Shown: positions 2,059-44,918 of the stretch, in pieces
Layout: the number at the start of each line of letters is the position of its first letter
Position numbering within the stretch: position 1 is the stretch's first letter
Assembly (NCBI GenBank): GCA_964106915.2
Contig: OZ066916.1
Strand: one strand, 5' to 3'
DNA length: 64,000 bases
DNA from: Podarcis gaigeae
Taxonomy: Eukaryota
The notes under the pieces: model-generated
Told to the model about the DNA's origin: nothing
What the model saw: only the letters and a program-made list of their open reading frames with translations
Databases searched by the model: none
Made by a program: the position numbers and the translations under genes

Positions 2059-5000
2059 TGCAGCAGTCAGTACTCAGACACAAATGGGAAGGAACCAATC
2101 TAGTTTTCAGAGACTGTGCTGAGGAGGGCTGCACTGAGGAAGAATGGTAGGAGGCACCCTCTCCCCCTGATCCTGAATCTTCCCAGGAGCAGGGGAACAG
2201 AATAGATTTGGAACAGTGGTTTGCAGAGGGGCATACTGTAGTTTAGAAGGCAGAAGCTGGGAAATACTGGATGGGGATCAGCTAGGAGAAGAAACAGTGG
2301 AAGAGAGAGGATTAACAGATTCACAGTCATCAGACAGCATTCCTCCAGCGCCCTCCCCAAGCTTGAGAAGAGCTCAGAAAGTCTTAGAACAGAAAGTGCA
2401 GAGGGTACAAACTCAGTTTACAAGATGTTGGAGTGACGTGGATTAATAGGGATGGAGGGGGTGTGAGCCTTAATTGGGAGCACCGCCATTCTAGGTAATA
2501 ATAATAATAATTTTTGATTTATACCTCGCCCTCCCCAGCCAATAAGTTGAATGAACACAACTTAAAAACAAAATTAAAATACATTAAAATATTGAAACAT
2601 TAAAATATTAAAATGTATTTTAATAATACATAATAGTAGGTAGACTGGTTCTTTGACTTTCACTGTGATTATTAAAGAATCTTAACTGGTAAGATGTTCC
2701 TTGTGTTTGATCTCTTCTTATTCACTGCCACAGGGGAGGAAGCCAATTCCCTGAAGTCTGATACTAGTTGTGTGAGCCAGAACTGACAGCGAGACTGGTA
2801 GGAGTGACTGGAACTCAGGGCCCCCAAACCAGGATATCAGGAAACAGCACCCCCAGAGCTGGACTCAGAGGAGCCAAGGGTCCCCCTGGCCAAACACCTC
2901 CTGTACCTATGCTCCTGATCACAGTAGATGGGAACAGATGGAGAACTGACTGGTTCAAGTCCTGAGTCACACCATTTTTAAGGCTCTCTACTTTTCATCC
3001 AGGGGCAGTGGAGCCTAAGAGTCAATGACGGCAAGTATGGACTTGGTTGGAATGAAGACTGTTTAAAGTGGACCAGGACTGGACAAACCTTCTAAAAAGG
3101 ACTCCTTCAGATAGAAGATGGAAATGGGACATGTCTTAATCTAGCTTATAGAAAATTCTGCAGCACCATGGACAATATTCTGACCTGCCAGCCTTGTGCT
3201 TTTGTCTTAATTTGTGCTCTGGGTCATGAATTGGACGCTGCCTGCCTCATCATCAGCTTCAGATTGTGGACTATGACATCTACTTTCCATGTGCTTCCTC
3301 AGCAACTGGGGAGGGAATCTCATTTATTTATAAGCTGAAAGTGCATGTGGTGGAACAGGAGTGCATATGCCACAGTGGTGCATTTGTGCAGTGGTCCTCA
3401 GACCCCAATGGAAGAACAAATCAATCTCTCCCTCTCATGGAGAGGGACATCTCTAATGGTGACCTTTGAAGGCCAGCCCAGAGAGGAAGAGAGGACAGAA
3501 CATACCATCCAGGCAATTTGACATCCTGAACTTATCAATGGGAAATAACCTGAAGCAATAATGGATGGTAATATCTTCAGAGATGTCCAAAGTGGTGCAT
3601 TTTGTAACCGTTGGATACCATCTTGATTCAAAACTGCATTCAGTGGTATCCAACCATTGACCAAAACCTGCTCCTTGCACTTGGGAACTGTCACACCAAA
3701 TTGGATGATGTCACACCAAACTGAGCGACAATATCTTCAGAGTCATCCAAATCAATACAGTTCAGAACAGTTTGGTCTCCAATCTGGAATCCAAACATTG
3801 TCGGATGGTATTCAAACAGAGATCAGAACCTGCTCCATGATCCTGGGAACCATCTTGCCATATTGGGTCATTGACTCTGGGTCCACCAACTCTTGGCCTT
3901 CTGCCTTGCGCCTCATCAGTATCAGTAGACACTGGCCACCACCACTCAGAATGACAGAAATTCCAAGTAATTGTAGTATGGTAAGACTAAGATGGTGAGC
4001 CATTTGGATGGTATCCGTGACCCTGGAGGCAGCCCTAAATGGAGTCTACTGATATTTTTATTATTACAATTTACTCGCCCTTCTCCCAAAGGTCCCAGGG
4101 CAGGTTACAACAATTTAAAAGTACAATACTGAAACACTTTAAAAAATTACAACTACAAAAGATGCAATAATGAAAAATAGGGTGGGTCCTTAAAAAATAC
4201 ACCTCAGGTGTAAGAAGCCTGAAGATTTACATAGGCTTATATCAGACAGCAAAATGTGAATCAGCGCCCTGCTGTGTGATAAACAAGAGGAAAAGTTAAT
4301 TTCTTGATTACTCTCCACGACAAAACCACTTTTGCAAATCCAGCCTCAGATATTTCAGCTGTGAGGCCCAAAGCAAATTGCATGGAGTCAAAAAGTACTG
4401 GAGCTCATAATTTACATTATGTTCTTCTAATTTCAAAAAGTTCTGTACTTCTGTAATTAAATTTTGCTAAGCCATAAACCAACCTTCACATCTCATGTCC
4501 CATTATGAATCTCATCCTTAGACAATCCATCTACGCTATTATCAGTCCCAGATGGTGGAACAAGAGCCAAGCAAAAGCTCTTGGAATTCATTTCAGCTGT
4601 TTACAAAACTGGCTAATTTTCAGGATATTAAAATGTATTGCAGAGTGCTATAAATCCTGCACCCTCTCCCCATATATATTGTGCTCCATGACACATCAGG
4701 AGAAAATACATTTAAAATTCCTAGGAAATTGCCTTGCCTCTTAACAGCTTAAAATTGATTTGATGCATTGTATGAGTTGATGAATTGATTTGATGCATTG
4801 TATGTAAGTTAATAATCTGCATACATCAATCACAGTTTGTGGGCTGGGGTGGCCCATGACTGAAGTAGGATATTTCAGCTTTCAGGAGAGACGGAGGGAA
4901 TATGTGAGTGGGTAAGCTCACCCATTCCTGTCATATTAGTAGGAACCATGAAGGCATCAGCTCAGTGCCTCTCCTCCTCTCTGCACAGCCTGTCATTTCT

Positions 5001-5360: not shown

Positions 5361-5628
5361 NNNNNNNNNNNNNNNNNNNNNNNNNNNNNNNNNNNNNNNN
5401 NNNNNNNNNNNNNNNNNNNNNNNNNNNNNNNNNNNNNNNNNNNNNNNNNNNNNNNNNNNNNNNNNNNNNNNNNNNNNNNNNNNNNNNNNNNNNNNNNNNN
5501 NNNNNNNNNNNNNNNNNNNNNNNNNNNNNNNNNNNNNNNNNNNNNNNNNNNNNNNNNNNNNNNNNNNNNNNNNNNNNNNNNNNNNNNNNNNNNNNNNNNN
5601 NNNNNNNNNNNNNNNNNNNNNNNNNNNN
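5361..5628. other. Assembly gap (N run)
   Basis: 268 consecutive N. Confidence 1.
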
Positions 5629-8050: not shown

Positions 8051-11000
8051 TAGTCATGATGGCTATGCTCTGCCTCCATGATCAGAAACACTAAATGCTT
8101 CCAATTGATAACCAACAGGAGGGGCCCAACCAGATGATTATGCGAAGCTGGAAGGCAGGACCTGAACGTAACAGTGCTCTCCTCACCTGTCAATACCACC
8201 AGCAAGTGGTATTCAAGGTCATACGGCTTTTGACAGTGGAAGCAGAACATTAGACTAGTAATCATTGATAGCCATATCCTCCATCAATATCCTCCAATGG
8301 TCAGAGGTGATGGGAATTTTAGTTATCTGGTGTAGAGGAATTATAGGTGTTACTTTTAAGAATAAATATATAGAATTGCAGAGTTGGAAGGGTCCTGAAG
8401 ACCATCTCATCCAACCCCCTGCAATTTAGGAACATGCAGCTGTCCTGTATGGGGGTCATCCTTGCAATCTTAGCATTATCAGTACCATGCTCTAAGTCTA
8501 ATCAATTGAGCTTTCCATTCACTATGGTGTATCCACCTTCATTGGACATACCAGAAAGCATAAAGTAAAGCAGGGTGGGAAAGGGAGAGAGAGGCAATGA
8601 TGATAGAATGAATCTGTTCCAGGAGCCATTTCATACCAAGACAAGTAAATCATGGTTTCATAGCAAAGTACAGAGAAAGCCGCTGAAACGTGATCCCAAG
8701 ATTTGAAGGATGAGACAGGAGAAGCCAAATTTATATAGTCTAGAAAAAGAGAAAACACATCTCAAGGAGGCTTGATGGGTCTATAAATGCCTTCATGGTA
8801 ACAATATATAAATGTTAACAGTATCAAGTCATTAAGGGGGATTTGATAGAAGACATTACACAGCCTACCGAAAAATGCTACAAATCAAGTGATGGTTCTA
8901 AGTTTGATGATCACGGAGCGTCGAAGATTCTGACATCTTTTGAAGTCTAGGCAGTTTCTTTTGTACCTCTTTGGCACTGTGAGCAGCAGATATGACCACA
9001 TAATGAAACCTTCTTGTTAATATAAAAAGGGCCCTTATCTTATAAAAACACAACCTGGGACTGCAGTGTACATTGTGGTTGGGAACGCCACTTTGAGCTG
9101 TGTGATACATCCATTTTGTTTTCTTCTCCCGCAGAAGTCAGAGATAGGAGTTTACTGCAAAGGGATTGCATTAAAAAATAATAATTGGAAGACAAAATTT
9201 AAAGCAGCCCAGTCTAAAACTATTTCATCGTCGAAAGCAATTTATCTTGGATATTATAAAATGAAGTGAAAACAATAAAGGCAAGGATGATGATTTTTAG
9301 ATTAGGCTGCTGCCACAGCACTAGAGAATCATGCGCTCTTGCAAGCCACCTGTTTCAGAGTAGGGCCATGGCAATTTATAGTTCTTCAGTCAAGGCCAAC
9401 ATGTCATTCATGGGCAGATGCCAGAATCCCAACATCCTGAGAAAGCCTACTTTTGATGCCAGCCCTGAGCTCCCCACATCAGGTGGATGTTTCTGTGAGC
9501 TGCCCACCATTTTAGTTTCTCAAAGTGGCCACATATCAATGACATACATCTAGCCTCATCTTTGTTTCCTTTTTGGAATGCACCTCTTTCAGCCAGCTTT
9601 TGGATGAGGTTGTCAGTGACCTAAATCCTTTATAAATCCTTATAGGGCCGTCTTAAGCATATCCGGCACTGTCGTGCAAAAATCCCTACAGCGCCCCCCC
9701 CCATTTTCCAGAGTTGTCATCCTTTTTTAAGGGGGGGACCCCAAAGTTGTTCACCTTTTTAAGGAAAGGTTCCCCAGAGTTGTTGACCTTTTTTGGGGGA
9801 GCTGACACCACGCTTACACATTATCTCTAACAAGCACTTAGAACAAAATAAAATGAAAAGGCAGAAGAAAAACTAATGAAGTTCTCAATTCCAAAGCAAG
9901 ACTCATTCAAGACTCAGCAGTTCTTCTAATTCATCCTCATGATTCAAATCACTGCATATCAAAAAGTTAAAGCAATCACCAGTTTGTTGTTCTTTAAATA
10001 AATTAATAAAGACACAGACAATGAAGTTCCCGGCCAATTTGTGTTTAAGTACAAAGCTGACGTTTTCAAATATTGTGGGGGGTGGGGGTGGATGTAAAGC
10101 AGTGACATCCTGAACCTAAAAAAGGACCCAAAACTTGGGTCACAAAGGCTGCAGCCCTAACTGCACTTACCTGAGAGTAAGCCCTGCTGAATCTAATAGG
10201 ACCTTACTTCTGAGTAGACAGTAGGACTGCAGCAAGAAACACAGTTGGGAATTAGGGCTTTTTGTTTAAAGTCTCAACCAGAGGAAAATGTAGTATTGGA
10301 GATTAGGAAAGGAATATGAATAGATTGGGGGGAGGGGGCTTGCGAGAGACCAAAAACCACAGGTAGCAAGACAAGGCACACTATCTGGGGAGCAAGTCTC
10401 ACACATAGTTGCTTGGGGCGAGGACTGCAGAGGGACCATAGTTGGGTTGTGTGTGTTTTTCAGAAAAACATAGAATTGGAAGGAATCCTGTCAGTCATCT
10501 AGCCCAACCCCCTGCAATGCTTTTTAGCTTGCGTTGATCTCAAAAACCTCCAGTGCCTTTCCCCCCCCATTGGATAGGCAATTAACAGGCTTGTTTCACA
10601 AATAAGGGAGAAGGAGTGTTGCTGGCTTGGTTTGGTTGGCCAAACCAAGAAGAAGAAGAATGAAGGGAGGAGGCTTCTCTTCCCTGGGATAGAGTTGTCT
10701 GTAACATTAAACACAGGGCACAATTCCAGGGAGAGAGAGAAACCAGGGCAGCTGCTGCTGCTACTCATGGCTTGGGCTAGATGTAGCTGAACAGGATGGG
10801 CAAGGGGACCCTGCAAGCAGGGCTGCATACCCAGTGAGGAGGCTCCAGACCAAAGGAGGAAACAGGGCAAGGGGGGGGGGGAGCTCCTCTCTTCTTCTTC
10901 TTCCTTCCGCCTCTCTTCTTCTTCTTCCTTCCTCCTACTCCTTGTGCTCCGTTTCCCCCTCGCCTCACCTCCCTCTTCCCACAGGGCAGGTGGGCCAAAA

Positions 11001-11070: not shown

Positions 11071-11991
11071 AGCACTGCAGGCCAGCCACCCATATAGTTG
11101 GCAGGGTGCAGCTTCCATCCTAAGCCTCTGCAGGGATTGCTCTCCTCCTGCAGAGGCTTGGGAGGCAAGCTGAACGCCCGCCAGCCATATGGTTGGCGAG
11201 GCGCAGCTGGCGGGTGCAGGGAAAGGGGAGGTTGCCGGCAAAGCCGCACAGCTCCCCCACTCGCTGGGGCATCCCTGAGAGGCCGGCGTCCTGGCGCAAG
11301 GCGCCAGTAAGCCCAATAGGAAAGATGCCTCCGAATCCTTACCCACCGCTGCTTTTCATGAATCGTAGTGATATAGCTGTTTTTCCGCATTTGCATTTTA
11401 CAAATATTATATATGTATGTTGTGTTGTTTATCATGCTGCAAACCACCCTGCAGATTATTAACAGGACATTTAAGTTTAATTATCATTCATAGCATGGTG
11501 CTGTAGTTGTGGCTACAGCTTTCTCTCTCCAGAATTTCCTTTTCGTAGTGCTTATAGGAAATGCACCAACAGACCATAAGCATGAGAGCCCTTCTCCTGA
11601 TTGTGAGAGCCCTGTTGTGTTTGGGTCTGTCTGCAGGCTTCCCATAGGCATCAGGTTGGCCATTGTGATATCTGGATGTTGAACTAGGTGGGAAATTGGC
11701 CTGATCCAAAAGGGCTCTTATCATCAGTATCTGGTAAATTCACATCCTTGCCACGCAGGAAGATTTTTTTAAAAAAACATCCTCTGCTGTTATTCATTTC
11801 AGGAAGAAATAAACCTGTCTGCTGTGGCAAGGGAGTAAAACACCAGAGCATAAGGTAACAATTCATCATTCCGCAAGCCCCATGTTGATGGAATGGATCC
11901 CCCAGATATGGACTGCCCCAAACCTATTCCATGGGGGTTGGCCAGTGTTGAACCTTACAAGTCAACCAAGCAGATTCCTAGCAGTCATATA

Positions 11992-34640: not shown

Positions 34641-37242
34641 AATAAAATAAAATGGGGGGCATGGTATTTTTTTGGAATCAAAAAGTGTATTGTATGTGAA
34701 AGTCTTGGCAAAGTTTCAGAAAACCCCTCACCATCCTGTTGTCCCCCTGTTGAGTCAGAATCATAGAATTGTAGAGTTGGAAGGGACCACAAGGGTTGTT
34801 GTTTCAGATTATAATTCTCTTTACCCATAAATTGCACATCTGTGCTGGTTGGGGCTGATGCGAGCTGTGGTCCCAACCACCTGGAATATACCAGGTTGGT
34901 GAAAGGTGGTCTAGGATATTAGATTTGGCAGAGTTTCTCTCTTTTTACACCACTTATCTTTTTATCCTTCATTTGCTTCCTTTAATTAAGTGTTGGATTT
35001 TCATGCTTTTTGCATTTTGACGCAGATGTGGCTGGTATGCACTTATTTTTCTTTCTCATCTGTATTTTGCATAATAAAAAATGGCAAATGTGTGTTATAT
35101 AAAAGGTAGGACAGATGTTTTCAGTGACATGAACAACAGTTCCTGTTATCAAGTTAATGTATTTCAAATGCTTCTTGGAATGCAATACACTCTGTTCTGC
35201 TGAACATCAGTTCTCATGGCTGAACGTCAGAAATACCACCACCTGTTCTTGTCCATTTTCAAAGGGTATGTATACACTACAAATCTAAAACAGGATGCCT
35301 TTTTTTCACCCAAGGAATCCTGGGAACCATTGTCCAATGAGAGGGTTAAGAAGCATGAGCTGTAGAGGTGAGGAACCTGTGGCCCTCCAGATGTTATTGG
35401 GACTACAGCTCCCATAATTCCCTGCTGGCTAGGGTGATGGGAGTCAGATTCCAAAACATCTGGAGGGCCACAGGTTTCCCACTCCTCACTAAAGGAATTG
35501 AAATTCCCAGGTTTCTTGGAGGAAGCCATGATAGTTCAATTAGGTTTCACTCTGTTTATCTTTGTTCAGTCTGAAAAACCTGTTGATGATGCCACAGTGC
35601 TTTAAAAATAGAGAGAAGGCTTCTGAAGATAACACCATACCAGAGTTGGGGCCTGCATTGCAAAGCCATTAGGACCGTACTTATAAAGGTCATAATGAAT
35701 AGCAGTCCAAGACAGCCACAAAGTGTTGTGTCAGGATGGATTATGTTAAGCAGTAGCTGGCAGTGTTGCCATCATTGTTTATAAAGGGCACTGTCTGTTT
35801 CTGTTTATGTCCCCATCTTTCACATTTGTTCCAATGCTAAAGCCCCTCTTTAATATTCACATTAGAGAAAGCAGCAGAAGAAAACTCTGAGCAGACACAG
35901 CCAGTATAAAAACTGACAGCGCAGAACATCGTGCTTTTAGTTGTTGATCTGCTGGCTTGTTTTTTGTCCATTGGAATTTGTACTTCAAAGCAACCTATGG
36001 GGCTTTTTTTGGTCTTTGCAAACACACACACATGTGGATTTAACAGTGCATGATAAGCAGAGCTTGGCTGCAAAACAGCACATGCTCGATAGCAGTGCCA
36101 TATAAACCAGGCAGACCCCCCACTGTGCATCAAAACAAAAAATGGTTTCTCAAGATGTCATCTGCTAAAAATGATAAAATGCACTTAGCAGTTCGTGTGC
36201 TGACATTTAGTTCCTTTCTCTTTTCGTTAAAAATACTGGAAGGGGGAGGGAGTGGAGTCTTGAATAACGTTCTTTCTTTCTTTCTTTCTTTCTTTCTTTT
36301 TCAAGGGACTCATCTTTCTGGTAAAGAAGTATTAAATAAAGATTAGATAGCTTTATAATTAAAAGAGAATTTTCAATGAATCTTTTTATTAATGCCTTCT
36401 CAGAGAGATGAAAGTAAAAATAAGTAAATTGTTCTGTTTATTCAGTTCTAAGGCAGGGGTGGGGAACTTGGGAAGATTTTGCCAAACTACAACTCCCATT
36501 TATCACTGATCATTGACTATAGTGGCTGGGGCTGATGGGAGCTGGAGCCTGGCAACACTGGAGGAATCCTACAACTCCCTTATTACACCAGCTTCACTGG
36601 CTGCTGGTCGGTTTTCAGGTATTATTGAAAGTGCTGGTTGTGATCTATAAAGCCCTATTAGGCTCAGGTCTAAGCTACCTGAAATTCCCTTATATGAACC
36701 TGCCCAGGTTCTAAGATCTTTGGTTCTGCCACCCTCTCGGGTAGCAACACAAGAGAGCCTTTCCTTTCTCTGGGTGTTCTCCTATTTTTCATTGTGTGCA
36801 GTGAAATTATACATGGTATTTGCACCTTTCATCAGGCTTCCATTTAGTTATTTGCATTGCACTTTTATTACGTAAGGGATCATGTTCGCTATCCAATTTC
36901 TTTTGTAAAATAGATAACTGGTTTCTTTTGTCAAGCAGATAACCTGGCACATTCCCCGGCACGCTCCTTTCGTATAACTGAAGAATGGGCCAAGTATAGG
37001 TGATCTGCTGCCATAGGGGCTAATCGTCAGAGAGATGTCGTTTGGAAGCAGTAAAAACAGCATAATGTACACAGTTTCATTATGTAACAAATTAATAAAC
37101 AACCCCAACAAAGCGTGTTCTCATTAAAAGAGAGCACGTGTTGCGGATGGGGCCAAGCAAAACCCTATTTAGTTGCCAGGCTATAGATGGCTATGGGCCT
37201 GAAGAAGATTGGGGATTTGTTACTGGGGTAAATTTGATGTTG

Positions 37243-37306
37243 CCAATTTAGGGGTGGGATCAATGCCTATATATAAGCAAGGTCCACAGCTTTCTCTTTC
37301 TCTTTT
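37243..37306 (+). promoter_or_regulatory. Pol II core promoter of the element
   Basis: CCAAT 37243-37247, GGGGTGGG 37251-37258, TATATATAA 37268-37276, pyrimidine (TCT-like) initiator ~30 nt downstream around 37300. Confidence 0.65.
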
Positions 37307-38587
37307 GCTGTGGACACCGGATCTGCACCGGAGCGATTTCAGCAAATGTTTGGGTTGTATATTTTCCCCTTTTCTCCCTTTCTTCTTCTTTCATTATTTT
37401 ATTGCTGTATAATTTTCTCTTCTCTTATTTTATTTCCTCCCCTTTTGTTACTCTCTTCAGACTTCGGCAGGGGGGGGGGGCTCTCGGCCCCGGGTGGCCT
37501 GCGGCCTGTTCCAGGCCGTGCCAGGGGACCAGAGCTGGGGGTGCGATCTTCCTAGCCTTCCCCAGCCTACTTCCGAGTGCCACCCCCTCGGGGTGCCAGC
37601 CGCGGGGATCGCCCGGCGGCATTATTTGGCCCGGCCGGGCCTCTGTTTTATTCTTCGCCCTTCCTAGGCCTTTTAGAGTGCCGGAGAGGCCCCTTGATTG
37701 TCCCGTGGGCTGGGAACGGGGCTTCGGCCCCCGTAAATTGTGCGCGCAAAGAGCGCGCGGAGACCGGCCGTTTTGTTTTTTTTCTGTTGTGCTTGTTTCG
37801 CGCCGCGCGCGGCTTTCTCCCCCGCCGCTTGGGCCTGCGGGCGTCGGGGTCGCGCCGCGGCCTCCTACCTGCCCGGGATTCCGGTGGCACCGGGGAGGCC
37901 CGCACCGGCCCCCCGGGTGTTGTCGGGGGGGGGTGCGCGCGCTCCAGGGGCCTGCTGATGCCGCGATCGGCCGCGGCCTGGTTTTCGGCCTGATTTGGGC
38001 CTTCCCTCCCCCTGTAAGTGCCAATCCGACCATTGCAGCCCCGCGGTAGGCTGCTCGGCGGTGGGGGCGACTGACCTGGCCTTGGGGCGGGCTCCGGTAG
38101 GTCGGCTACTGCCGCTGGTGGTGGGGGGCTGCTGGCAGGCCCCAAAGGGAGCCTTGATTAAGCGAGGCGGCTGGGGGCCCTCCATTTGCTGCCTCATTCG
38201 GCGGGAGCGCCATTTTGTTTCTTTTAGACCACGTGGTGGCCTCTAGTGTTCAGGCCTTGTAACAGCAGGGCCTGGTGGCTGCATTGTCCTAGGCCAGAGC
38301 ATTATTTAGCCTTATATCGCAGCCCCTAGTGGCTGTTTATATGCTTGCAGGTATTTAATTCCTCTCTTGCACACGGCCAGTCAGCTATTGCTAGAGAGGT
38401 ACTGCTGTTGAGTATAAGGTTGCAGGTTTGACCCCCCCCCCTATTCGGACAGCCTTTTACTCCTAGTGGCTGGGGGGAGAAGCAAGTGGTTGGTTTCTTG
38501 CCTACTGGTGTTTTAATTTATCATTTGTCTTGACTTTTATTTAACAATTTAATTTCTCTACCTAGCATTGTTGCGGATTTAGCGACC

Positions 38588-38589
38588 TA

Positions 38590-38631
<42 letters not shown>

Positions 38632-38644
38632 TAATTAATTAATT
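38588..38644. repeat. (TAA)n microsatellite inside the putative leader intron of the element
   Basis: Direct observation; lies between donor-like CAG|GTATTT (38350/1) and acceptor TTCTATTCTCTTTTCACCAG (ending 38662). Confidence 0.9.
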
Positions 38645-38670
38645 CTATTCTCTTTTCACCAGTAGTAGGA

Positions 38671-39138
38671 ATGGCTCCTAAGAAGGCAGCAGGGAGGCCT
38701 GATCCAGCCCGCTCTTCGAAGCGGCCTATAAAAGGCCCGTCCCAGGCCTTGCGCTCTCCGGAGCCTAGTCAGTCTTTGAAACGCATCCAGTCCATGGTTT
38801 CAAGTTTGTCTGGCGACCCGGCGGCACTGACAAGGGTGGAGGCAGAGATGGATGGATTGCTGCATCGCTGCTCAACCCCGTCAACCTCCTCTGCGATCCT
38901 GGCTCCCCCTGGAGGCGCAGCATTTCCAGCGACTTCATCTAGCAAAGAGGAGGGAGAACCATTTTCTGCCAGTGGTTCTTTGCCTAATGCACAGGCCCTG
39001 TCTTCGGTCTCACCGGCGGCGCAGGTGGCCATGCCAAGGGGTCGTGGTCGTACCAGGGTTGGTGCCAGGAGGAGGGCGTCGACTCGGGGTCATGTAGTGC
39101 GGGGTTCTCCTTTGCAGTCTACGGTTGTGGGGAATTAG
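38671..39138 (+). CDS. Gag-like ORF1, N-terminal basic/low-complexity part
   Basis: ATG in good Kozak context (GGAATGG), MAPKKAAGRP...; first ORF of the element; stops at 39138 out of frame with the conserved Gag C-terminal part. Confidence 0.6.
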   Translation: MAPKKAAGRPDPARSSKRPIKGPSQALRSPEPSQSLKRIQSMVSSLSGDPAALTRVEAEMDGLLHRCSTPSTSSAILAPPGGAAFPATSSSKEEGEPFSASGSLPNAQALSSVSPAAQVAMPRGRGRTRVGARRRASTRGHVVRGSPLQSTVVGN

Positions 39139-39722
39139 CCCCCCCCCCGCTTGAGGGTCAGGAGCCGTTGGACAAGGGCTTCCCTGCCCCCAAGAAGCGG
39201 GCGTTCGTAGCAAAAGCAGATAGGACTTTTGAACGTTGGATGGATAGTTTCCAGGTTTTTGCTGGTGTGGTTTCCGCAGCTTATCCCAGGAGATCTTTGC
39301 ACTTATGGGTGTATCTGTCTATTGTTCGTTCTGCCTTTACGATGGCCGGAGAGACCGCCGCTTTGTCTTACGACCAGAATTTTAGGCGTAGAGCGGCCAA
39401 GATCCCCACGGCCCGATGGGATCGGAAGGACTTGGACGTCTGGACCACTTACGTGGCCCCCCGCATTGATAAGAAGGTCCCTGATACGCAGAAATTTAAG
39501 GCTGCCCCATCAAGGTTAGGCCGCAAGCTGTACTGCTGGGATTTTAATAAGGGCGCTTGTCCACGACAATCCTGTAAGTACACGCACGCGTGCGAAAAGT
39601 GCTCAGGGAACCACTCTGCGTCCACGTGTTTGGGGGGCCGCCGTCCCTTTCGGAAAGGCGGGGGCTCCCAACAGCCCCCGAAAGCCGCTTCCCAGGTCCC
39701 TGCCGCTGGAGCGGGAAAGTAG
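39118..39722 (+). CDS. Gag-like ORF1, conserved C-terminal part with zinc knuckles
   Basis: RTFERWMDSFQVFAGV...YP...Y...SYDQNFRRRAA..P..RWD motif of YR-retroelement Gag; CWDFNKGACPRQSCKYTH (CCCH) followed by CEKCSGNHSASTC (CCHC). Frame is open from 38988; start placed at a putative acceptor. Confidence 0.8.
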
Positions 39723-39739
39723 CATCCTATCCTCTTTAG

Positions 39740-41328
39740 CTTACACCCCGGTAAAGTTGCAACCGCTGCTATCATTGTTGGAGTTATATCCTGATGCCGA
39801 ATCGGCATCGTATTTGCGTGCGGGTTTTTCCTCAGGTTTCAGAATTCCGGTGGTTGCCACTCCGGTTGCCAAGGACCCAGCTAACCAAAAATCGATTAGG
39901 GATATGCCAGAGGTGGCGCGTAAGAAAATTGGAAAGGAACTAGCTTTACGTCGCATGGCCAGTCCTTTTGCTGCCCCCCCTTTTCCCAAATTGCCCATTT
40001 CACCTTTGGGTATGGTTCCCAAAAAGGCTCCGGGGGAATTCCGCCTAATACATAACCTCTCTCATCCTAGAGGCACGTCAGTAAATGACGTGATTCCCCC
40101 GGAGCTTTGTTCGGTGAAATATGCCTCTCTCGATCACGCGATTAAAATGATTCGGAAGTTTGGGCGGGGCGTCTTGCTGGCAAAATGCGACATCGAATCA
40201 GCGTTCAGACTGCTTCCAATTCATCCCGATGATTTTTGGTTGCTGGGATTTCAGTTTGAGGGGGGATTTTACTTTGATAAGGCTATGCCCATGGGTTGCT
40301 CGGTGGCCTGTGCAGCTTTTGAGTGTTTCAGTTCATTTTTGGAGTGGGCTTTGCGTGAGAAGACCGGGCTGGGCGGAGTCACACATTATCTCGATGATTT
40401 TTTGGTGGCCTCGGCGAGCAATACAGGGGACTGTGTGGTGTTATTGCAGGCATTTGCTTCCCTAGCGGAAGATCTGGGTGTCCCTTTAGCTGCGGAGAAG
40501 ACCGAGGGTCCTTCTACGCAGCTAACCTATTTGGGTATCTTATTGGATACCATGGCCCAAACCTCCAGCTTGCCGCCTGAGAAGATAACCAATCTTAAAA
40601 AGGTTATTGAGGAACTCGTTCCCTTACAGAAAGTCACCTTGCGGCAGCTTCAGTCGTTGCTGGGCCACTTGAATTTCGCTTGTAGGGTGGTCGCTCCTGG
40701 GCGATCATTTTGCTCTCGTTTGGCCAGACTTACATCTGGCTTGAAGGCCCCGCATCACAGGGTGCGCCTTCCTAGTCAGGTACGGGCTGACCTGGACATT
40801 TGGTTGGAATTCCTTGAGGAGTTCAACGGTATGTCATTGTGGCAGCACACTTTGAACCTCCACAATGACTTCCAGGTGCATTCTGATGCTGCTGGGTCCT
40901 TGGGTTTCGGTTTGTACTGGGACGGCAGGTGGTGCGCTGAGCGTTGGCCCACGGCTTGGCGGGAGCAGGCCATAACTCGGGATCTAACCTTTCTCGAGTT
41001 TTTTCCCATTGTAGTGGCAGTGCACTTGTGGGTCGAGCACTTCAGGGACCATCGAGTTTGTTTCTGGACTGATAACCAGGCGGTGGTGGACGTACTGGCC
41101 AAGCAGTCTTCATGATCCCCTAGGGTATCTGCCCTTTTACGGGCCTTCGTTTTGCATTGTCTGCGTTTTAATATTGTATTTTCTGCTCGTTTTGTTCCGG
41201 GAGTTTCTAACGAGATTGCTGATGCTCTGTCCCGTTTTCAGATGGAGCGATTCAGGTCCCTGGTGCCAGTGGCTCGAGACCGTCCGGAAATTTTCCCGGA
41301 TCCTCTCTGGAACCTTGGCAGGACTTAG
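39740..41328 (+). pseudogene. Reverse transcriptase-RNase H (pol) with one in-frame TGA at 41113-41115
   Basis: RT motifs VPKK..GEFRLIHNLS, KCDIESAFR, MPMG, HYLDDF; RNase H SDAAG, LEFFP, WTDNQ and, past the TGA in the same frame, VPGVSNEIADALSR...LWNLGRT* ending 41328. Frame open from 39520; first ATG only at 39904. Confidence 0.93.
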
Positions 41329-42209
41329 TTTTACAGGGAGTAGCTGCATCCGTTGCCCCCTCTACACTGAGGTCCTATAGAAAGGCCTGGGCGGATTTCT
41401 TATTATTTAATGGGCAGTCTGTAGGGGACGTGTCCACCCCCCATTCCACCTCGCATGTGCTCCGGTATTTGGCACATCTGTTTCAGATGCGCCGGGCGGC
41501 TAGGACCCTGCGTCTGCACTCAGCAGCAATTTCCTTTTTTAATAGGGCATATTTTAACAAGGACCCGTGTGGGAAGTTTGTGGTGCGCAGGGCCCTGGAG
41601 GGATGGGGGCGACTCACTCCTTCCAGGCCTATTCCTAGGCGGCCCATTACATTTGAATTGCTAGCGCAGATGCGGACTAAATTGCGGAGCGTCTGTTGGT
41701 CAAAATTTGAGGCTCGGCTATTTTCTGCAGCCTTTTCTTTAGCCTTCTTTGGGGCCCTGAGGGTCGGAGAGGTGGTCCTGGAGCCTAAGCAGGACGGAGG
41801 TTCAAGGGGGTTGCTGTTGCAGGATGTAAGCATGTCCTCAATGGACCTGCAGGTTAATGTCAGAAATTCAAAAACGGACCAGCTAGGCAGGGGCGCTGTC
41901 ATTACGCTCCCTGCGACTGGGGATGGTGGCCCTTGCCCGGTAAAAGACCTTACGAAGTATTTGGCCCTGCGCCCCGCCGGGGAGGGGCCCCTGTTCATTC
42001 ATGAAAATGGCCGCCCGCTGGTGAGACATCAGTTTACAAGTGTGTTGCGCAAAGCTATCGCGGCATGCGGCCTTCCGGCCCAGGAGTTTGCTCCTCACTC
42101 CTTTAGGATAGGAGCTGCTACAACTGCTGCCCACTGGGGTTTGTCGGTTAAACGGATAAAAGACTTGGGACGGTGGAGATCAGATGCATTCAAAGTCTAT
42201 GTGCGCTAG
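41242..42209 (+). CDS. Tyrosine recombinase (phage-integrase family)
   Basis: N-terminal SVAPSTLRSYRKAWADF; catalytic FFGALRVGE (R), SKTDQ (K), HSFRIGAAT (HxxR), LGRWRSDAFKVY (W,Y). Frame open from 41223 and overlaps the pol 3' end; first ATG only at 41487. Confidence 0.93.
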
Positions 42210-42246
42210 TAATGTGGTCTGTACTCACATTTGTTTTTAACCCTAG

Positions 42247-42821
42247 GTCGGGCTGCTATCCGTATCTGGATAGTAGGGCACAGTATTGTGCATTGGGCTG
42301 CGGACAGAGCTCGTCAATCCGGACTGGGTGATGGCCTAGGCTTCCCGCAGCACGTTCAGGTGTCCTGGATCTCCAGAAGGGGGATGCTGTGGAGGGAATT
42401 ATTACCTCTCTTGCAAGGGCGTGTCCTTCGTTTTGGCCCTCCTTCGGCGATTGTGGTGCAACTTGGGGAGAATGATATGGTTTCCTCTTCCTGCTATGAG
42501 CTGCGTGCGGCCATTTTACAGGACCTGAGGGAACTGGCGGCACTGGTGCCGACCGCTAGGTTAATTTGGTCACAGCTGCTTCAACGACGCACTTGGAGGG
42601 GTAGCCCTTGCCCAGCTGCCACCGAACGAGTGAGGAAGCGGATTAACTCCGCGGCGAGTAAGCTGGTGGTCGATTTGGGCGGGTGCGTGATCCCTCACCC
42701 TCTTATTTCATTCCGGGCGATTGAATTTTATAGGGATGACGGGGTTCATCTCTCTTCAGTTGGGAATGATGTGTGGTTGGATGCTTTGGTGTCCAAGTTG
42801 AGGGTGTGGTTTGATTTGTGA
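42247..42821 (+). CDS. SGNH/GDSL-family hydrolase (esterase)
   Basis: Block I WIVGHS, block II RRG, block III QLGEND, block V DGVHLS; no ATG before the catalytic Ser (first ATG 42384); preceded by CTCAC...TTTGTTTTTAACCCTAG acceptor. Confidence 0.88.
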
Positions 42822-43162
42822 GTGGTTGGCGGCGAGCGTAAGGGCTCGAATGGCGGTTAGGCATTGGTTAAAATTGGTTGGTGGAGGGGTATGGATTGGC
42901 TGTGCCTGCCCCTCCTATGCTGCTGCTGACGGGTATTCCCTTAAAGGAATTCTGAAGCTTACCATCCCCTTCGTCCAAACCCTGACGGCAGGGTGCGGGC
43001 CGTGTAAGCTTCAAGGAACATGCGGTGGTAGCTGAGGGTCTGTTTCGCAGCTCCAGCTGACCCTGATCTTGTTCCTCCGGGACTGACTAGGGAGTCAGTG
43101 CTGTTCCCCAAAGGCGGGGGGAAACAGCTAGTCATAACCAATGCCTAAGCAACCACTCTCAA
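42816..43162 (+). other. Predicted multibranched cis-acting RNA/ssDNA structure in the element 3' UTR
   Basis: Perfect 14-bp pairing 42857-42870/43135-43148; 12/13 pairing 42816-42828/43150-43162; 10-bp pairing 42953-42962/43004-43013; at least six further nested stems. Confidence 0.7.
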
Positions 43163-43172
43163 TTTGTATGAT

Positions 43173-43178
43173 AATAAA
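43173..43178 (+). terminator. Polyadenylation signal of the element
   Basis: AATAAA immediately after the structured region, followed by a GT-rich tract at 43227-43253. Confidence 0.65.
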
Positions 43179-44918
43179 GTTGTGGCCAAAATTATGCCAA
43201 AAACCTTAAACAAAAATTATGCGTAATGTGTGAGTTATTGGGGTTGGGGTTTTGGGGGACCTCAGCATGCAACCATCTTTTGCTGAGCCAAGAACCACTC
43301 GTTAATTCATCACAAAAAACCAGAGCATATAAAATGGGGTGGGGGGAGGAAGTCATGATGAGGTGGACTAGGAGGACCCTTTATTCACAATTCATAAATG
43401 AATTTTTCTGACGCCCCCAATCCACAATCATCCCAACATGCCCCATTTGCCCACTTCCCATTGCTGAAAAATCAGAGGCAGAATATGCATGACCCATGGT
43501 GGAACTTTCAGCATGCATACTGGGGAAACTCCAGTGGCAGTACTGGTGCAATTCCCTCTCTGCCAATAGATCAGCACCTCTAGGGTTCCCTAAGGCTCCT
43601 CAAAAAGCCTGAAGTTACTAAAATGTGTGAATGTGCATTTTTAGGGGAACATTTCTTTCACCCAGCACATTTTCACAGGAACAAGATTTAAATGCAATTT
43701 ATGTCCTTTGCTTGCCCTGTTTATGTTCTAAATCCTCCACAGCATATTTTTTGGTAGTATTAGTGTTGCTAGTGTTCTGTTGTAATGAATTAATGAAAAA
43801 ACTAACTAACTAGGAAATGTTAACCTGTGCGTGAGTGAGTCCTGCAAATGCCTTCATGTTATTTGAGTGAGATAGTTATACCACCAATTTGATTGGGTGC
43901 AGCCCAAGTATGGTTCACATTCATGTATGTACATTGCATGGATGTATGAAGCTGTGAGCAGAAGTATGAAAAAGTCTGTGCGACTCCCTTAAACCCAGAG
44001 AAGCCCTGAATTCTAATTCTGAGCAGCTCTAGAGTTTTCATTATAGCGGCAGAGCCAATATTAAAGGAGAGGTCTTGTTTCATTGATTTTACTGTGAGAA
44101 GCCAGTTGGAGTTCTGATAGGCCAGGAAGATTAGTAAAACCCTGATTAAATGCGTCAGTGGTCCATAATGGAGTAAAAGGGTATGCCTTTATCAGTTCCA
44201 AGCTGTTTCACTTCAAATGTGGTGTTAAAATGAAAGAAAATTTGGCGTGCACAAACTGCCCAAATTTACAAGGGGAGTCGCTAGCCAAGGAGCAGAGTCT
44301 CCAAGAATATCCCAAGCTCTTGTTCCTTCCCTCCTGACCTGCTGCCTGGATCCACTCATATTTTACAAAGTTTTGAGTTCTTGTATTCCATCCACAGGTC
44401 CTCATTCTTTCGTTAAGTGGCACGGCTTCCAGCAGCTTCCCGTCAGTATTTAAACTGACAACTTCATAAAGCCCCCCACCATGCAGAAAGGATAACCACA
44501 GGACCTCCATCCACACAGAGAGATAGCAGTCCTGGTTCCTTCATCTGCTTCAGAACATGAATTACTTTATCATAAAACTTGAGCCCCATATAGCACAAGT
44601 CTTAGAAAGTAATTACTGGGGCTGGATTGAGAACTCCACTCTTCAAAACAGAGGCAACTCGCTGGAATTTATTAATTGATAATGTAATTTGTTAGTTTCT
44701 AGGGCTGTGTTTGGCTCTGTTCTGCTTTGACCTGGAGAACACCCAACCAGGAACCAGCCACTGAATAAATTCAAGGACGGGGCTAATATTTATTATGGGT
44801 GTCTATTCCAACCAAGCTGCAGAGAGCAGGAGAGTTTGATCTTGCTGGGTGCTGCCTTTCCAGCAAATTCCCTGCAGGGAACACAATGGCAAAGCAGACC
44901 GCTGCAGCCAGGAGTGGG

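What the first reader, a model, noticed from the sequence alone, without database searches (positions are those of the whole stretch)
42816..43162. Large nested stem-loop structure filling the element's 3' UTR: candidate replication, priming or packaging RNA
Seen in sequence: starting at the SGNH stop codon, almost the whole UTR can pair. Outer stems: TTGTGAGTGGTTG 42816-28 with CAACCACTCTCAA 43150-62 (1 mismatch), and TTAGGCATTGGTTA 42857-70 with TAACCAATGCCTAA 43135-48 (perfect 14 bp). Between them is a hairpin CGAGC/GCTCG (42833-48) bracketed by two TGGCGG motifs (42827-32, 42851-56), forming a three-way junction. Inner arms: GGAGGGG/CCCCTCC (42883-42915); ATTCC/GGAAT (42935-50); TGAAGCTTAC/GTAAGCTTCA (42953-43013) enclosing ACCCTG-ACGG-CAGGGT; AGGAACA/TGTTCCT (43014-76) enclosing AGGGTC/GACCCT; ACTGACT/AGTCAGT; and GCTGTTCCCC/GGGGAAACAGC. 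It ends ~10 nt before AATAAA. Established: YR retrotransposons have no recognised tRNA primer-binding site, and their priming mechanism is poorly understood. Inference: this could be an RT-recruiting/self-priming or Gag-packaging signal, analogous to hepadnavirus epsilon or retron msr. No hammerhead core was found.
Basis: partly seen in the sequence, partly recalled or inferred. Interest (0 to 1): 0.82.

Follow-up and report, generated by a model that had tools for sequence, protein, structure and literature searches.

The report
Conserved RNA fold in Ngaro repeat
The stem-loops after the last gene of this lizard-type tyrosine-recombinase (Ngaro) retrotransposon are real, are kept by compensating mutations in related elements of several lizard genomes, and form most of the element's "B" terminal repeat. 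This gives a concrete candidate RNA signal in a class of mobile elements whose start of copying is unknown.

Summary
No Rfam family matches.

The region is not a private 3' UTR. From 42851 to about 43272 it is the "B" split direct repeat of an SGNH-encoding Ngaro retrotransposon. Podarcis and Lacerta homologues carry the canonical A1-ORFs-B1-A2-spacer-B2 layout, with B1 = B2 at 98.8-100% identity. The window copy is A1-ORFs-B only.

The same closed multi-hairpin layout recurs in about eleven diverged element lineages:
- Hairpins 5-6: 96% of cells paired against 25-61% when partners are slid. All nine pairs of helix 6 show double changes.
- Hairpins 7-9: 86% paired against 37-52%, with 14 covarying pairs.
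- The 14-bp closing stem and both TGGCGG motifs are nearly invariant.
- Conserved G·U wobbles favour the sense RNA.

Function is inferred, not shown. The most likely role is a cis-acting replication signal at the transcript's 3' end (reverse transcriptase or Gag recognition, repeat-guided strand transfer). An RNA export or stability element is the main rival. Literal self-priming is possible but unsupported.

The parts
37109..37330 (+). A1 repeat (promoter-like). It starts with AAAGCGTGTTCTC...GAGAGCACGTGTTGCGG. CCAAT is at 37243-47 and the TATA box at 37268-76. The 3' end coordinate is approximate.
   Evidence: Aligns to A1 and A2 of Podarcis and Lacerta elements at 88-91% over the first ~45 nt. 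CCAAT and TATA are conserved in alignment A7.
39757..41115 (+). Reverse transcriptase ORF fragment
   Evidence: Pfam RVT_1, E 6e-14.
41430..42209 (+). Tyrosine recombinase ORF fragment
   Evidence: Pfam Phage_integrase, E 9e-6, 25.9 bits, just under the 27.1 cutoff.
42231..42821 (+). SGNH/GDSL hydrolase ORF. The stop codon TGA at 42819-21 lies inside helix H1.
   Evidence: Pfam Lipase_GDSL_2, E 2e-4. Homologues at 38-83% identity in lizards, E down to 1e-102.
42817..42828 (+). H1 5' arm (outer closing stem). It pairs with 43150-43161.
   Evidence: MFE fold. The lower part is invariant. The upper part covaries (GTGGTTG/CAACCAC here, GGTATTGG/CCAATACC in L010 and L011). The full-length form exists only in the B1 context; a 5-bp version forms in one B2-context fold (L014c).
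42827..42856 (+). Three-way junction: TGGCGG (42827-32), hairpin H3 (42833-37/42844-48) and TGGCGG (42851-56).
   Evidence: Both TGGCGG motifs are conserved in all lacertid-type B1 copies. H3 shows a C-G to G-C swap in 3 of 8 sequences.
42851..43272 (+). B repeat (the only copy in this element). It contains H2-H9, the poly(A) signal and the recombination half-site at its end.
   Evidence: Aligns to both B1 and B2 of L004, L005, L008 and L009 at 68-72%. B1 = B2 at 100% in L005, L008 and L014, starting exactly at (T)TGGCGG.
42857..42870 (+). H2 5' arm (TTAGGCATTGGTTA). It pairs with 43135-43148.
   Evidence: Perfect 14 bp. Eleven pairs are invariant in 10 sequences. A U-A to A-U swap occurs in L010 and L011. 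The GGCATTGG/CCAATGCC core is also present in the agamid families L006 and L013.
42883..42915 (+). H4 hairpin (GGAGGGG/CCCCTCC)
   Evidence: 91% of cells paired. Present as three tandem covarying copies in L012.
42932..42952 (+). H5 hairpin (ATTCC/GGAAT) with a conserved YUUAAA-type loop
   Evidence: 100% paired and nearly invariant in all lacertid-type families, including L010 and L011.
42953..43013 (+). H6 long stem (42953-62/43004-13) enclosing H6b (42973-76/42997-43000) and H6c (42979-84/42989-94).
   Evidence: On covariance-model alignment A6, all 9 H6 pairs have changes on both sides and 96.8% of cells are paired. H6b has a U·G wobble in 10 of 10 sequences.
43014..43076 (+). H7 stem-loop (AGGAACA/TGTTCCT enclosing the AGGGTC/GACCCT arm)
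   Evidence: Inner helices are 84-87% paired, with 8 pairs changed on both sides. The outer stem is seen in nearly all of the independently folded homologues (not in L012 or L011) but was not formally counted.
43082..43099 (+). H8 hairpin (ACTGACT/AGTCAGT)
   Evidence: Longer in the homologues (GCTGGCTTCCGG.../...CCGGAAGNCAGC). 89-94% paired, with compensatory changes.
43100..43128 (+). H9 hairpin (GCTGTTCCCC/GGGGAAACAGC)
   Evidence: 83% paired; 4 of 9 pairs changed on both sides.
43135..43161 (+). 3' arms of H2 (43135-48) and H1 (43150-61)
   Evidence: The ATAGTCATAACCAATGCCTAAGCAACCACTC block is nearly invariant in the lacertid-type families.
43173..43188 (+). Poly(A) signal AATAAA followed by the conserved GTTGTGGCC
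   Evidence: AATAAA plus (G/C)(T)TGTGGCC is present in every family, including L006, L013 and L007, which share no other nucleotide similarity.
43262..43272 (+). End of B (…GCATGCAA). This is the left half of the B|A junction palindrome, mutated in this copy.
   Evidence: In the homologues B ends ...AACACGCAA and abuts AGCGTGTT of A2. The window sequence after 43272 is unrelated to A.

Best explanation
Shown: the region is an evolutionarily maintained, multi-branched fold of the sense strand. It has two stacked closing stems (H1, H2), a junction hairpin (H3) and six internal hairpin arms (H4-H9). It is encoded by the first ~300 nt of the B split direct repeat of an SGNH-encoding Ngaro (tyrosine-recombinase) retrotransposon. 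It lies between the stop codon of the last ORF and the element's own AATAAA. A carries CCAAT and TATA boxes and B carries the poly(A) signal. So, if those predicted signals are used, every sense transcript should end with this domain about 25-35 nt from its 3' end, and a read-through genomic RNA of a complete element (A1-ORFs-B1-A2-spacer-B2) would carry it twice. Inferred: it works in cis as the structured, R-like part of the repeat. It would be the platform at which the element's reverse transcriptase and/or Gag recognises its own RNA to begin minus-strand synthesis, and the homology that guides transfer between the B2 and B1 copies. That would explain why B1 and B2 are homogenised from exactly the TGGCGG that sits 0-1 nt 5' of the closing stem (adjacent to it).
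For: The structure is non-random in the window. z-scores are negative in 13 homologous sequences, from -1.2 to -7.7. The region is the B repeat. Covariation: A6 has 96.0% of cells paired against 25-61% slid, 12 pairs with double changes against 1-4, and 0/500 shuffles as good. A4 has 86.4% against 37-52%, and 14 pairs against 0-7. A2 has 92.5% against 31-52%. Independently folded homologues show H5-H9 (H5-H8 in L010) in the same order in 8 of 10 sequences; the MFE folds of L012 and L011 differ. Families with no nucleotide similarity (L006, L013, L007) still have a long-range closing stem between the stop codon and AATAAA, with 21-37 long-range pairs against 9-12 in shuffles. Sense strand: the + strand MFE is lower than or about equal to the - strand MFE in all 13 sequences (lower in 11, within 1 kcal/mol in L011 and L014d). 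A U·G wobble is conserved 10/10 in H6b and a G·U 6/8 in H7. G·U cells outnumber A·C cells, 34 to 18 and 26 to 6. The promoter boxes in A and the poly(A) signal in B are conserved. The B domain is as conserved as the ORFs, about 72% against 70.6%. The primer of YR retrotransposons is unknown, and a 3' hairpin has been proposed for DIRS-1 (PMC7192593).
Against: Transcript ends are predicted from the TATA and AATAAA motifs only. The alignments used for counting are partly fitted to the structure (RNAalifold, covariance model). The sequences are related, and there are only about 10 distinct lineages. The closing stems are conserved in sequence, so they carry little covariation. The - strand also folds well, with z often stronger. 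A 3' UTR position fits an export or stability element equally well. The window copy itself has broken ORFs and only one B.
Confidence: 0.5

Rival explanations
1. Post-transcriptional expression element. The folded 3' UTR domain recruits host factors for nuclear export, stability or translation of the unspliced element RNA, like the retroviral CTE, the IAP RTE or the hepadnaviral PRE. It has no direct role in reverse transcription.
For: Its position just upstream of the poly(A) signal in every predicted transcript matches these elements, as do its size (~300 nt) and its closed multi-hairpin layout (established knowledge of CTE and RTE, not tested here). An invariant hairpin H5 with a conserved loop looks like a protein-binding site. 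It is a sense-strand structure.
Against: It does not explain why the domain lies inside the homogenised repeat with the repeat boundary directly adjacent to the closing stem. There is no Rfam match to any known export element.
Confidence: 0.22
2. Literal self-primer. After cleavage at the 3' side of H2, the 3' arm annealed to TTAGGCATTGGTTA primes minus-strand synthesis leftwards across TGGCGG. The repeated TGGCGG then serves as microhomology for the template switch that regenerates B2 from B1.
For: Both arms of H2 are invariant in sequence across families with only 45-47% SGNH identity. B homology starts exactly at TGGCGG next to H2 in three young elements. The B2 context looks like the B1 context minus the 24 nt between the two TGGCGG. 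No tRNA-type primer-binding site is evident. A 3' hairpin primer has been proposed for DIRS-1.
Against: No cleavage site, ribozyme motif or read evidence exists. The RNA 3' terminus does not fold back, and there is no complement of GTTGTGGCCA in the element. The 5' leader is not complementary to the B start. The argument from the repeat boundary is circumstantial.
Confidence: 0.12
3. The fold acts at the DNA level. It would work either in the single-stranded cDNA intermediate (second-strand priming or circularisation) or as a cruciform or paired binding sites for the tyrosine recombinase.
For: The reverse complement also folds, with strong z-scores of -5.3 to -10.4 in many copies. DIRS-1 amplifies through linear single-stranded cDNA (PMC7192593). 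B ends in the recombination junction.
Against: The conserved G·U wobbles would be A·C mismatches in the minus-strand cDNA. G·U cells outnumber A·C cells, 60 to 24 summed over the three alignments. The + strand is at least as stable (within 1 kcal/mol) in all 13 sequences. The evident recombinase site is the palindrome at the B|A junction, about 110 nt downstream of the domain.
Confidence: 0.1
4. There is no selected function. The stems are chance palindromes, or the relic of a small inverted-repeat DNA transposon nested in the UTR.
For: The 14-bp arms resemble terminal inverted repeats. Several copies (L010, L013) have weak z-scores of -1.2 to -1.7.
Against: Compensatory changes occur in most helices and far exceed the slid and shuffled controls. 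No target-site duplication flanks H2. The domain co-diverges with the ORFs in all families and is part of the replicated B repeat.
Confidence: 0.04

Closest known systems
Split direct repeat 'B' of Ngaro retrotransposons (A1-ORFs-B1-A2-B2; Goodwin & Poulter 2004, as summarised in PMC9210276 and PMC8547959)
   Same: Window 42851-43272 is homologous to both B1 and B2 of complete lizard elements. The same gene order is present (Gag-like, RT, YR, SGNH hydrolase), as reported for amphibian Ngaro elements.
   Different: The papers I could read describe B only as a repeat. None mentions a conserved secondary structure, the TGGCGG boundary or a poly(A) signal in B. The window copy has a single B (A1-ORFs-B). 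The lizard elements have a ~180-nt unique spacer between A2 and B2.
3' UTR of R2 and 'stringent' LINE elements, recognised by their reverse transcriptase (e.g. Bombyx R2, PMC11194090; other details from my own knowledge)
   Same: Both are a structured domain of a few hundred nucleotides directly after the last ORF, at the RNA 3' end. In both, the fold is conserved more than the sequence in the inner hairpins.
   Different: R2 uses target-primed reverse transcription and has no terminal repeats. Here the RT is of the LTR-element type, the element integrates by tyrosine recombinase, and the domain is part of a repeat. Binding by RT is not shown.
Structured R regions of retroviral LTRs (HIV-1 TAR and poly(A) hairpins, HTLV RxRE), from my own knowledge
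   Same: The structure lies in the repeated segment that carries or adjoins the poly(A) signal. It is present twice per genomic RNA and could assist strand transfer.
   Different: The repeat topology differs (split direct repeats, one copy internal). There is no tRNA primer-binding site next to it and no sequence or Rfam similarity.
Retroviral and IAP RNA export elements (CTE, RTE), from my own knowledge
   Same: They sit in the 3' UTR upstream of the poly(A) site and form closed multi-hairpin folds of 150-250 nt in unspliced retroelement RNA.
   Different: Those elements lie outside the repeats and are defined by binding to NXF1 or RBM15. Nothing here tests that.
Proposed 3' hairpin self-primer of DIRS-1 (Poulter & Goodwin, cited in PMC7192593)
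   Same: The element order is the same (YR retrotransposons), the problem is the same (no known primer), and both have a structure at the 3' end.
   Different: The DIRS-1 hairpin is a short terminal hairpin (positions 4792-4805). Here a ~300-nt domain ends about 25-35 nt before the predicted RNA end, and the terminus itself does not fold back.

Membership tests
Ngaro-like YR retrotransposon (order DIRS) | Encodes reverse transcriptase and a tyrosine recombinase instead of a DDE integrase | tested here: met
   RVT_1 E 6e-14. Phage_integrase E 9e-6, slightly below the Pfam cutoff.
Ngaro-like YR retrotransposon (order DIRS) | Split direct repeats A1-[ORFs]-B1-A2-B2 | tested here: inconclusive
   Met in the homologues L004, L005, L008, L009 and L014. 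The window copy has A1 and one B only, with no second A or B anywhere in the window. That fits a B1/B2 recombination derivative or a unit-length insertion.
Ngaro-like YR retrotransposon (order DIRS) | Extra SGNH hydrolase ORF after YR (vertebrate Ngaro subgroup) | tested here: met
   Lipase_GDSL_2 E 2e-4. Lizard homologues are named SGNH hydrolase-type esterase by their sources. The feature is described for amphibian Ngaro in PMC9210276.
B split direct repeat | Homologous to a segment present twice in complete elements, after the last ORF and at the 3' end | tested here: met
   Window 42851-43272 aligns to both B1 and B2 in four loci.
Any described RNA family (Rfam 15), including hammerhead, HDV-like, twister, HBV epsilon and R2 elements | Covariance-model match at or near the gathering score | tested here: not met
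   Only two chance-level hits, E 0.41 and 0.5, far below gathering.
Hepadnavirus epsilon-type protein priming | Short bulged stem-loop that templates a primer linked to a terminal-protein domain of Pol | not testable with these tools
   No epsilon match in Rfam. A TP domain was not looked for. The architecture (a 300-nt multi-branch domain) is unlike epsilon.
Retron msr/msd | Branching G with a 2'-5' linkage, flanked by inverted repeats a1/a2, with a bacterial retron RT | not testable with these tools
   The RT here is a eukaryotic LTR-type RT inside a transposon. The comparison is a resemblance only.
Tf1-type self-priming | The 5' end of the transcript is complementary to a site next to the repeat boundary | tested here: not met
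   The duplex of the predicted 5' leader with the B start is no better than shuffles, z +0.06 to +1.5, in the window and in L008.
tRNA-primed LTR-type element | A primer-binding site of 10 nt or more complementary to a tRNA 3' end, next to the repeat | not tested
   B starts with TGG, but by my own recollection the 18-mer complement does not resemble a cytosolic tRNA 3' end. No tRNA set of the host was available.

The most novel reading that the evidence does not exclude
The B domain is the long-sought primer structure of YR retrotransposons. The invariant H2 duplex would be processed so that its 3' arm primes minus-strand cDNA at the TGGCGG boundary. The duplicated TGGCGG would guide the template switch that rebuilds B2 from B1, so the edges of the split direct repeats would be footprints of priming and transfer, as LTR edges are in retroviruses.
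Probability: 0.12. Interest if true: 0.85.

Novelty: new variant of a known kind. Interest (0 to 1): 0.6.

Why it matters
How tyrosine-recombinase retrotransposons start reverse transcription and regenerate their unusual repeats is still unknown (PMC7192593). This finding gives a defined, conserved cis-element in vertebrate elements, with exact helices, invariant motifs (TGGCGG, H2, H5) and naturally occurring compensatory variants. It ties that element to the boundary of the B repeat, so priming and strand-transfer models for Ngaro elements become directly testable. It also adds a candidate new structured-RNA family, and shows that B is more than a repeat.

Tried and rejected
- Rfam scan of 42000-44000 at E up to 1: nothing meaningful.
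- Repeat searches for the second A or B in the window: none, so the copy is A1-ORFs-B.
There is therefore no read, expression or transcript-end evidence, and read laying went unused.
- The closest relatives (Logan contigs L001-L003) end 25-77 nt after the stop codon, so they were useless for the domain.
- A plain MAFFT + RNAalifold run on the whole domain recovered only the sequence-conserved helices, because the variable centre was out of register. This was solved by sub-domain alignments and a covariance model.
- Model R1 did not detect the agamid and cordylid families (L006, L013, L007) at E up to 1. Their similarity is in architecture, plus the GGCATTGG/CCAATGCC core in L006 and L013 only.
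- No complement of the conserved 3'-terminal GTTGTGGCCA exists in the element.
- There is no excess complementarity of the 5' leader or the 3' end with the domain.
- The spacer S is not a diverged copy of the start or end of the internal region, apart from its last ~17 nt.
- The nested-MITE reading was rejected: no target-site duplication, and there is covariation.
- Goodwin & Poulter 2004 could not be read. A prior description of this structure there, or in Poulter & Butler 2015, cannot be excluded.
- Two literature queries failed on syntax and one returned nothing.

Full report
**1. Observation**

- The SGNH ORF stops at TGA 42819-21, inside the 5' arm of the outer stem.
- AATAAA is at 43173-78, 10 nt after the outer stem.

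As RNA, 42816-43162 folds to -162.7 kcal/mol against -127.4 ± 5.4 for dinucleotide shuffles (z -6.5, 0/100 as good). The reverse complement gives z -5.6.

In the MFE, 32 pairs span at least 70% of the segment, including a 14-bp run. Shuffles average 8.9 such pairs and never exceed a 9-bp run. No Rfam family matches.

**2. What the region is**

The surrounding ORFs are RT (RVT_1), a tyrosine recombinase and an SGNH/GDSL hydrolase. This is the gene set of vertebrate Ngaro elements (PMC9210276).

The SGNH protein has homologues in Podarcis, Lacerta, Phrynocephalus and Hemicordylus. I fetched eleven loci.

In Podarcis lilfordi (L004) the element has the canonical split direct repeats:
- A1 3972-4189 = A2 10701-10915.
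- B1 10281-10703 = B2 11091-11514.

L005, L008, L009 and L014 have A and B pairs that are 100% identical.

Window 42851-43272 aligns to both B1 and B2 of these elements.

The window holds no second A or B, and the element ends exactly at the end of B. It is therefore an A1-ORFs-B copy. The likely origins are B1/B2 recombination or a unit-length insertion.

Between A2 and B2 the lizard elements carry a ~180-nt unique spacer that is conserved among the lacertids.

Two further features fix the position of the domain in the transcript:
- A contains conserved CCAAT and TATA boxes (window 37243-47 and 37268-76).
- B contains the poly(A) signal.

If these predicted signals are used, sense transcripts start near the end of A and end about 10-20 nt after AATAAA in B. 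The folded domain would then sit about 25-35 nt from the RNA 3' end. This is inferred from motifs and is not shown.

**3. Conservation of the fold**

B begins at an invariant TGGCGGTTAGGCATTGG, and the 3' arms of H2 and H1 form a second nearly invariant block. Homology between B1 and B2 in three young elements starts exactly at (T)TGGCGG, directly 5' of H2 (0-1 nt).

Each of 13 homologous sequences, folded on its own, has a negative z-score (-1.2 to -7.7) and a long-range closing stem. In most lacertid-type sequences the inner region independently folds into the same ordered set of hairpins H5-H9.

Formal pair counts:

| Alignment | Helices | Cells paired | Slid partners | Pairs changed on both sides | Shuffles as good |
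|---|---|---|---|---|---|
| A2, 10 sequences, helices placed by hand | H1-H5 | 92.5% | 31-52% | 5; mostly invariant sequence | 0/500 |
| A4, 8 sequences | H7-H9 | 86.4% | 37-52% | 14, against 0-7 slid | 0/500 |
| A6, built with model R1 | H5-H6 | 96.0% | 25-61% | 12, against 1-4 slid; all nine H6 pairs | 0/500 |

Model R1 was built from six sequences. It recovered every lacertid-type B copy, including the distant L010 and L011 at E 3e-5 and 2e-4.

Further compensatory changes:
- H2 shows a U-A to A-U swap in L010 and L011.
- The upper part of H1 changes from GTGGTTG/CAACCAC to GGTATTGG/CCAATACC in those families. This was read directly. It slips register by one column, so it counts as "broken".
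- H3 swaps C-G for G-C.
- L012 carries three tandem copies of H4, each with its own compensating stem.

The agamid families (L006, L013) keep the GGCATTGG/CCAATGCC core with a differently extended stem. The cordylid L007 has an unrelated 9-11-bp closing stem at the same place. Their long-range pairing is 2-4 times that of shuffles, but the run length is only moderately unusual.

Caveats:
- There are few lineages, and the sequences are related.
- The alignments are partly fitted to the structure.
- One spurious row (E 0.29) is included in A6.

**4. Which strand**

The reverse complement also folds, and its z-scores are often stronger. Several results nevertheless favour the sense RNA over the minus-strand cDNA, though they do not prove it:
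- The + strand is at least as stable, within 1 kcal/mol, in all 13 sequences.
- H6b has a U·G wobble in 10 of 10 lineages.
- H7 has a G·U in 6 of 8 sequences.
- G·U cells outnumber A·C cells, 34 to 18 in A2 + A4 and 26 to 6 in A6.

**5. Context-dependent parts**

The full 12-13-bp H1 and the H3 hairpin exist only in the B1 context, where the 5' arm is the stop-codon region.

The end of the spacer before B2 reads CTTGTAAGGT-TGGCGG, against TTGTGAGTGGT-TGGCGG before B1. The B2 context therefore looks like the B1 context without the 24 nt (H3 plus the second TGGCGG). It can still form a 5-bp GGTTG/CAACC extension of H2.

**6. Mechanism**

Shown:
- A conserved sense-strand fold forms most of repeat B, immediately upstream of the poly(A) signal.
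- The repeat boundary lies at the foot of the closing stem.

Inferred, and my preferred reading (about 0.45-0.5): a cis-acting replication signal. This would be the structured, R-like part of the repeat, where RT and/or Gag recognise the RNA 3' end to start minus-strand synthesis, and which guides transfer between the B copies.

The primer of YR retrotransposons is unknown, and a 3' hairpin has been suggested for DIRS-1 (PMC7192593).

Rivals:
- An export or stability element of the CTE/RTE type (0.22).
- Literal self-priming from H2 (0.12).
- A cDNA- or DNA-level role (0.10).
- No function, or a nested MITE (0.04).

Against simple fold-back or Tf1-type priming:
- The conserved 3'-terminal GTTGTGGCCA has no complement in the element.
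- Neither the predicted 5' leader nor the 3' end pairs with the domain better than shuffles.

**7. Comparison with known systems, and novelty**

The element is a Ngaro retrotransposon, and the region is its B repeat. Both are known entities.

The papers I could search and read describe B only as a repeat. None mentions a conserved fold, the TGGCGG boundary or the poly(A) signal in B. The original 2004 description could not be read.

Functionally the nearest analogues are RT-recognised 3' UTRs of R2 and other LINEs (PMC11194090; title and abstract only), structured retroviral R regions, and export elements. Membership in any Rfam family was tested and not met.

I rate it a new variant of a known kind, with interest 0.6.

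**8. Limits**

I did not try another route, so there is no expression or transcript-end evidence.

Assays that would need a restored element are referred.

Noticed in passing
window 37107-37150 and 43262-43272; L004:10685-10745, L005:11525-11590, L008:8065-8125, L014:11790-11850: The B|A junction of complete elements is a palindrome, AACACGC-AAA-GCGTGTT. A third copy in direct orientation (GCACGTGTT) lies 14 nt further on, an FRT-like layout. This is probably the tyrosine-recombinase crossover site. L014 has matching G>A and C>T changes in two of the copies. Elements begin (A)AAGCGTG and end ACGCAA(A), with no obvious target-site duplication.
   Followed up: partly
window 37243-37276: Repeat A carries conserved CCAAT and TATA boxes about 135 and 160 nt from its start, so A looks like the element's pol II promoter (U3-like). 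A2 could also drive a short A2-spacer-B2 transcript.
   Followed up: partly
window 37109-43272: This copy has only A1 and one B, with no A2-spacer-B2. L010, L011, L006, L013 and L007 also show no split repeats within 7 kb. Single-B copies therefore seem common, as B1/B2 recombinants or unit-length insertions.
   Followed up: partly
window 43179-43188: (G/C)(T)TGTGGCC directly after AATAAA is conserved in every family, including those with no other nucleotide similarity. It would be the last few bases of the RNA before the poly(A) tail. Its function is unknown, and no complement exists in the element.
   Followed up: partly
L014:13005-13820 (-) and L014:16965-17777 (+): Two solo A-spacer-B units lie near a complete element. 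They are about 78% identical to that element's B repeat and 81.5% identical to each other. They are either A1/A2 recombination relics or small non-autonomous elements.
   Followed up: no
L012:6005-6130: The H4 hairpin is present as three tandem copies with different but self-complementary stems (CTAGGGG/CCCCTAG, CAGAGGTA/TACCTCTG, CAGGGGTA/TACCCCTG) in an element from an ENA metagenome assembly.
   Followed up: no
window 37450-38200: The element's 5' leader is a 60-73% G+C, CpG-rich stretch with no Pfam-recognisable ORF. The 215-aa ORF at 37402-38049 has no family hit.
   Followed up: no
window 38583-38640: A (TAA)n microsatellite lies just upstream of the ATG at 38671.
   Followed up: no
L001:1530-1560, L002:1533-1615, L003:1191-1273: Logan contigs of the closest relatives (76-83% SGNH identity) all break 25-77 nt after the stop codon, inside the domain. 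This is probably assembly-graph branching where the multi-copy B repeat begins.
   Followed up: no
window 5361-5628: The only N run in the window. It is far from the element and was not touched.
   Followed up: no
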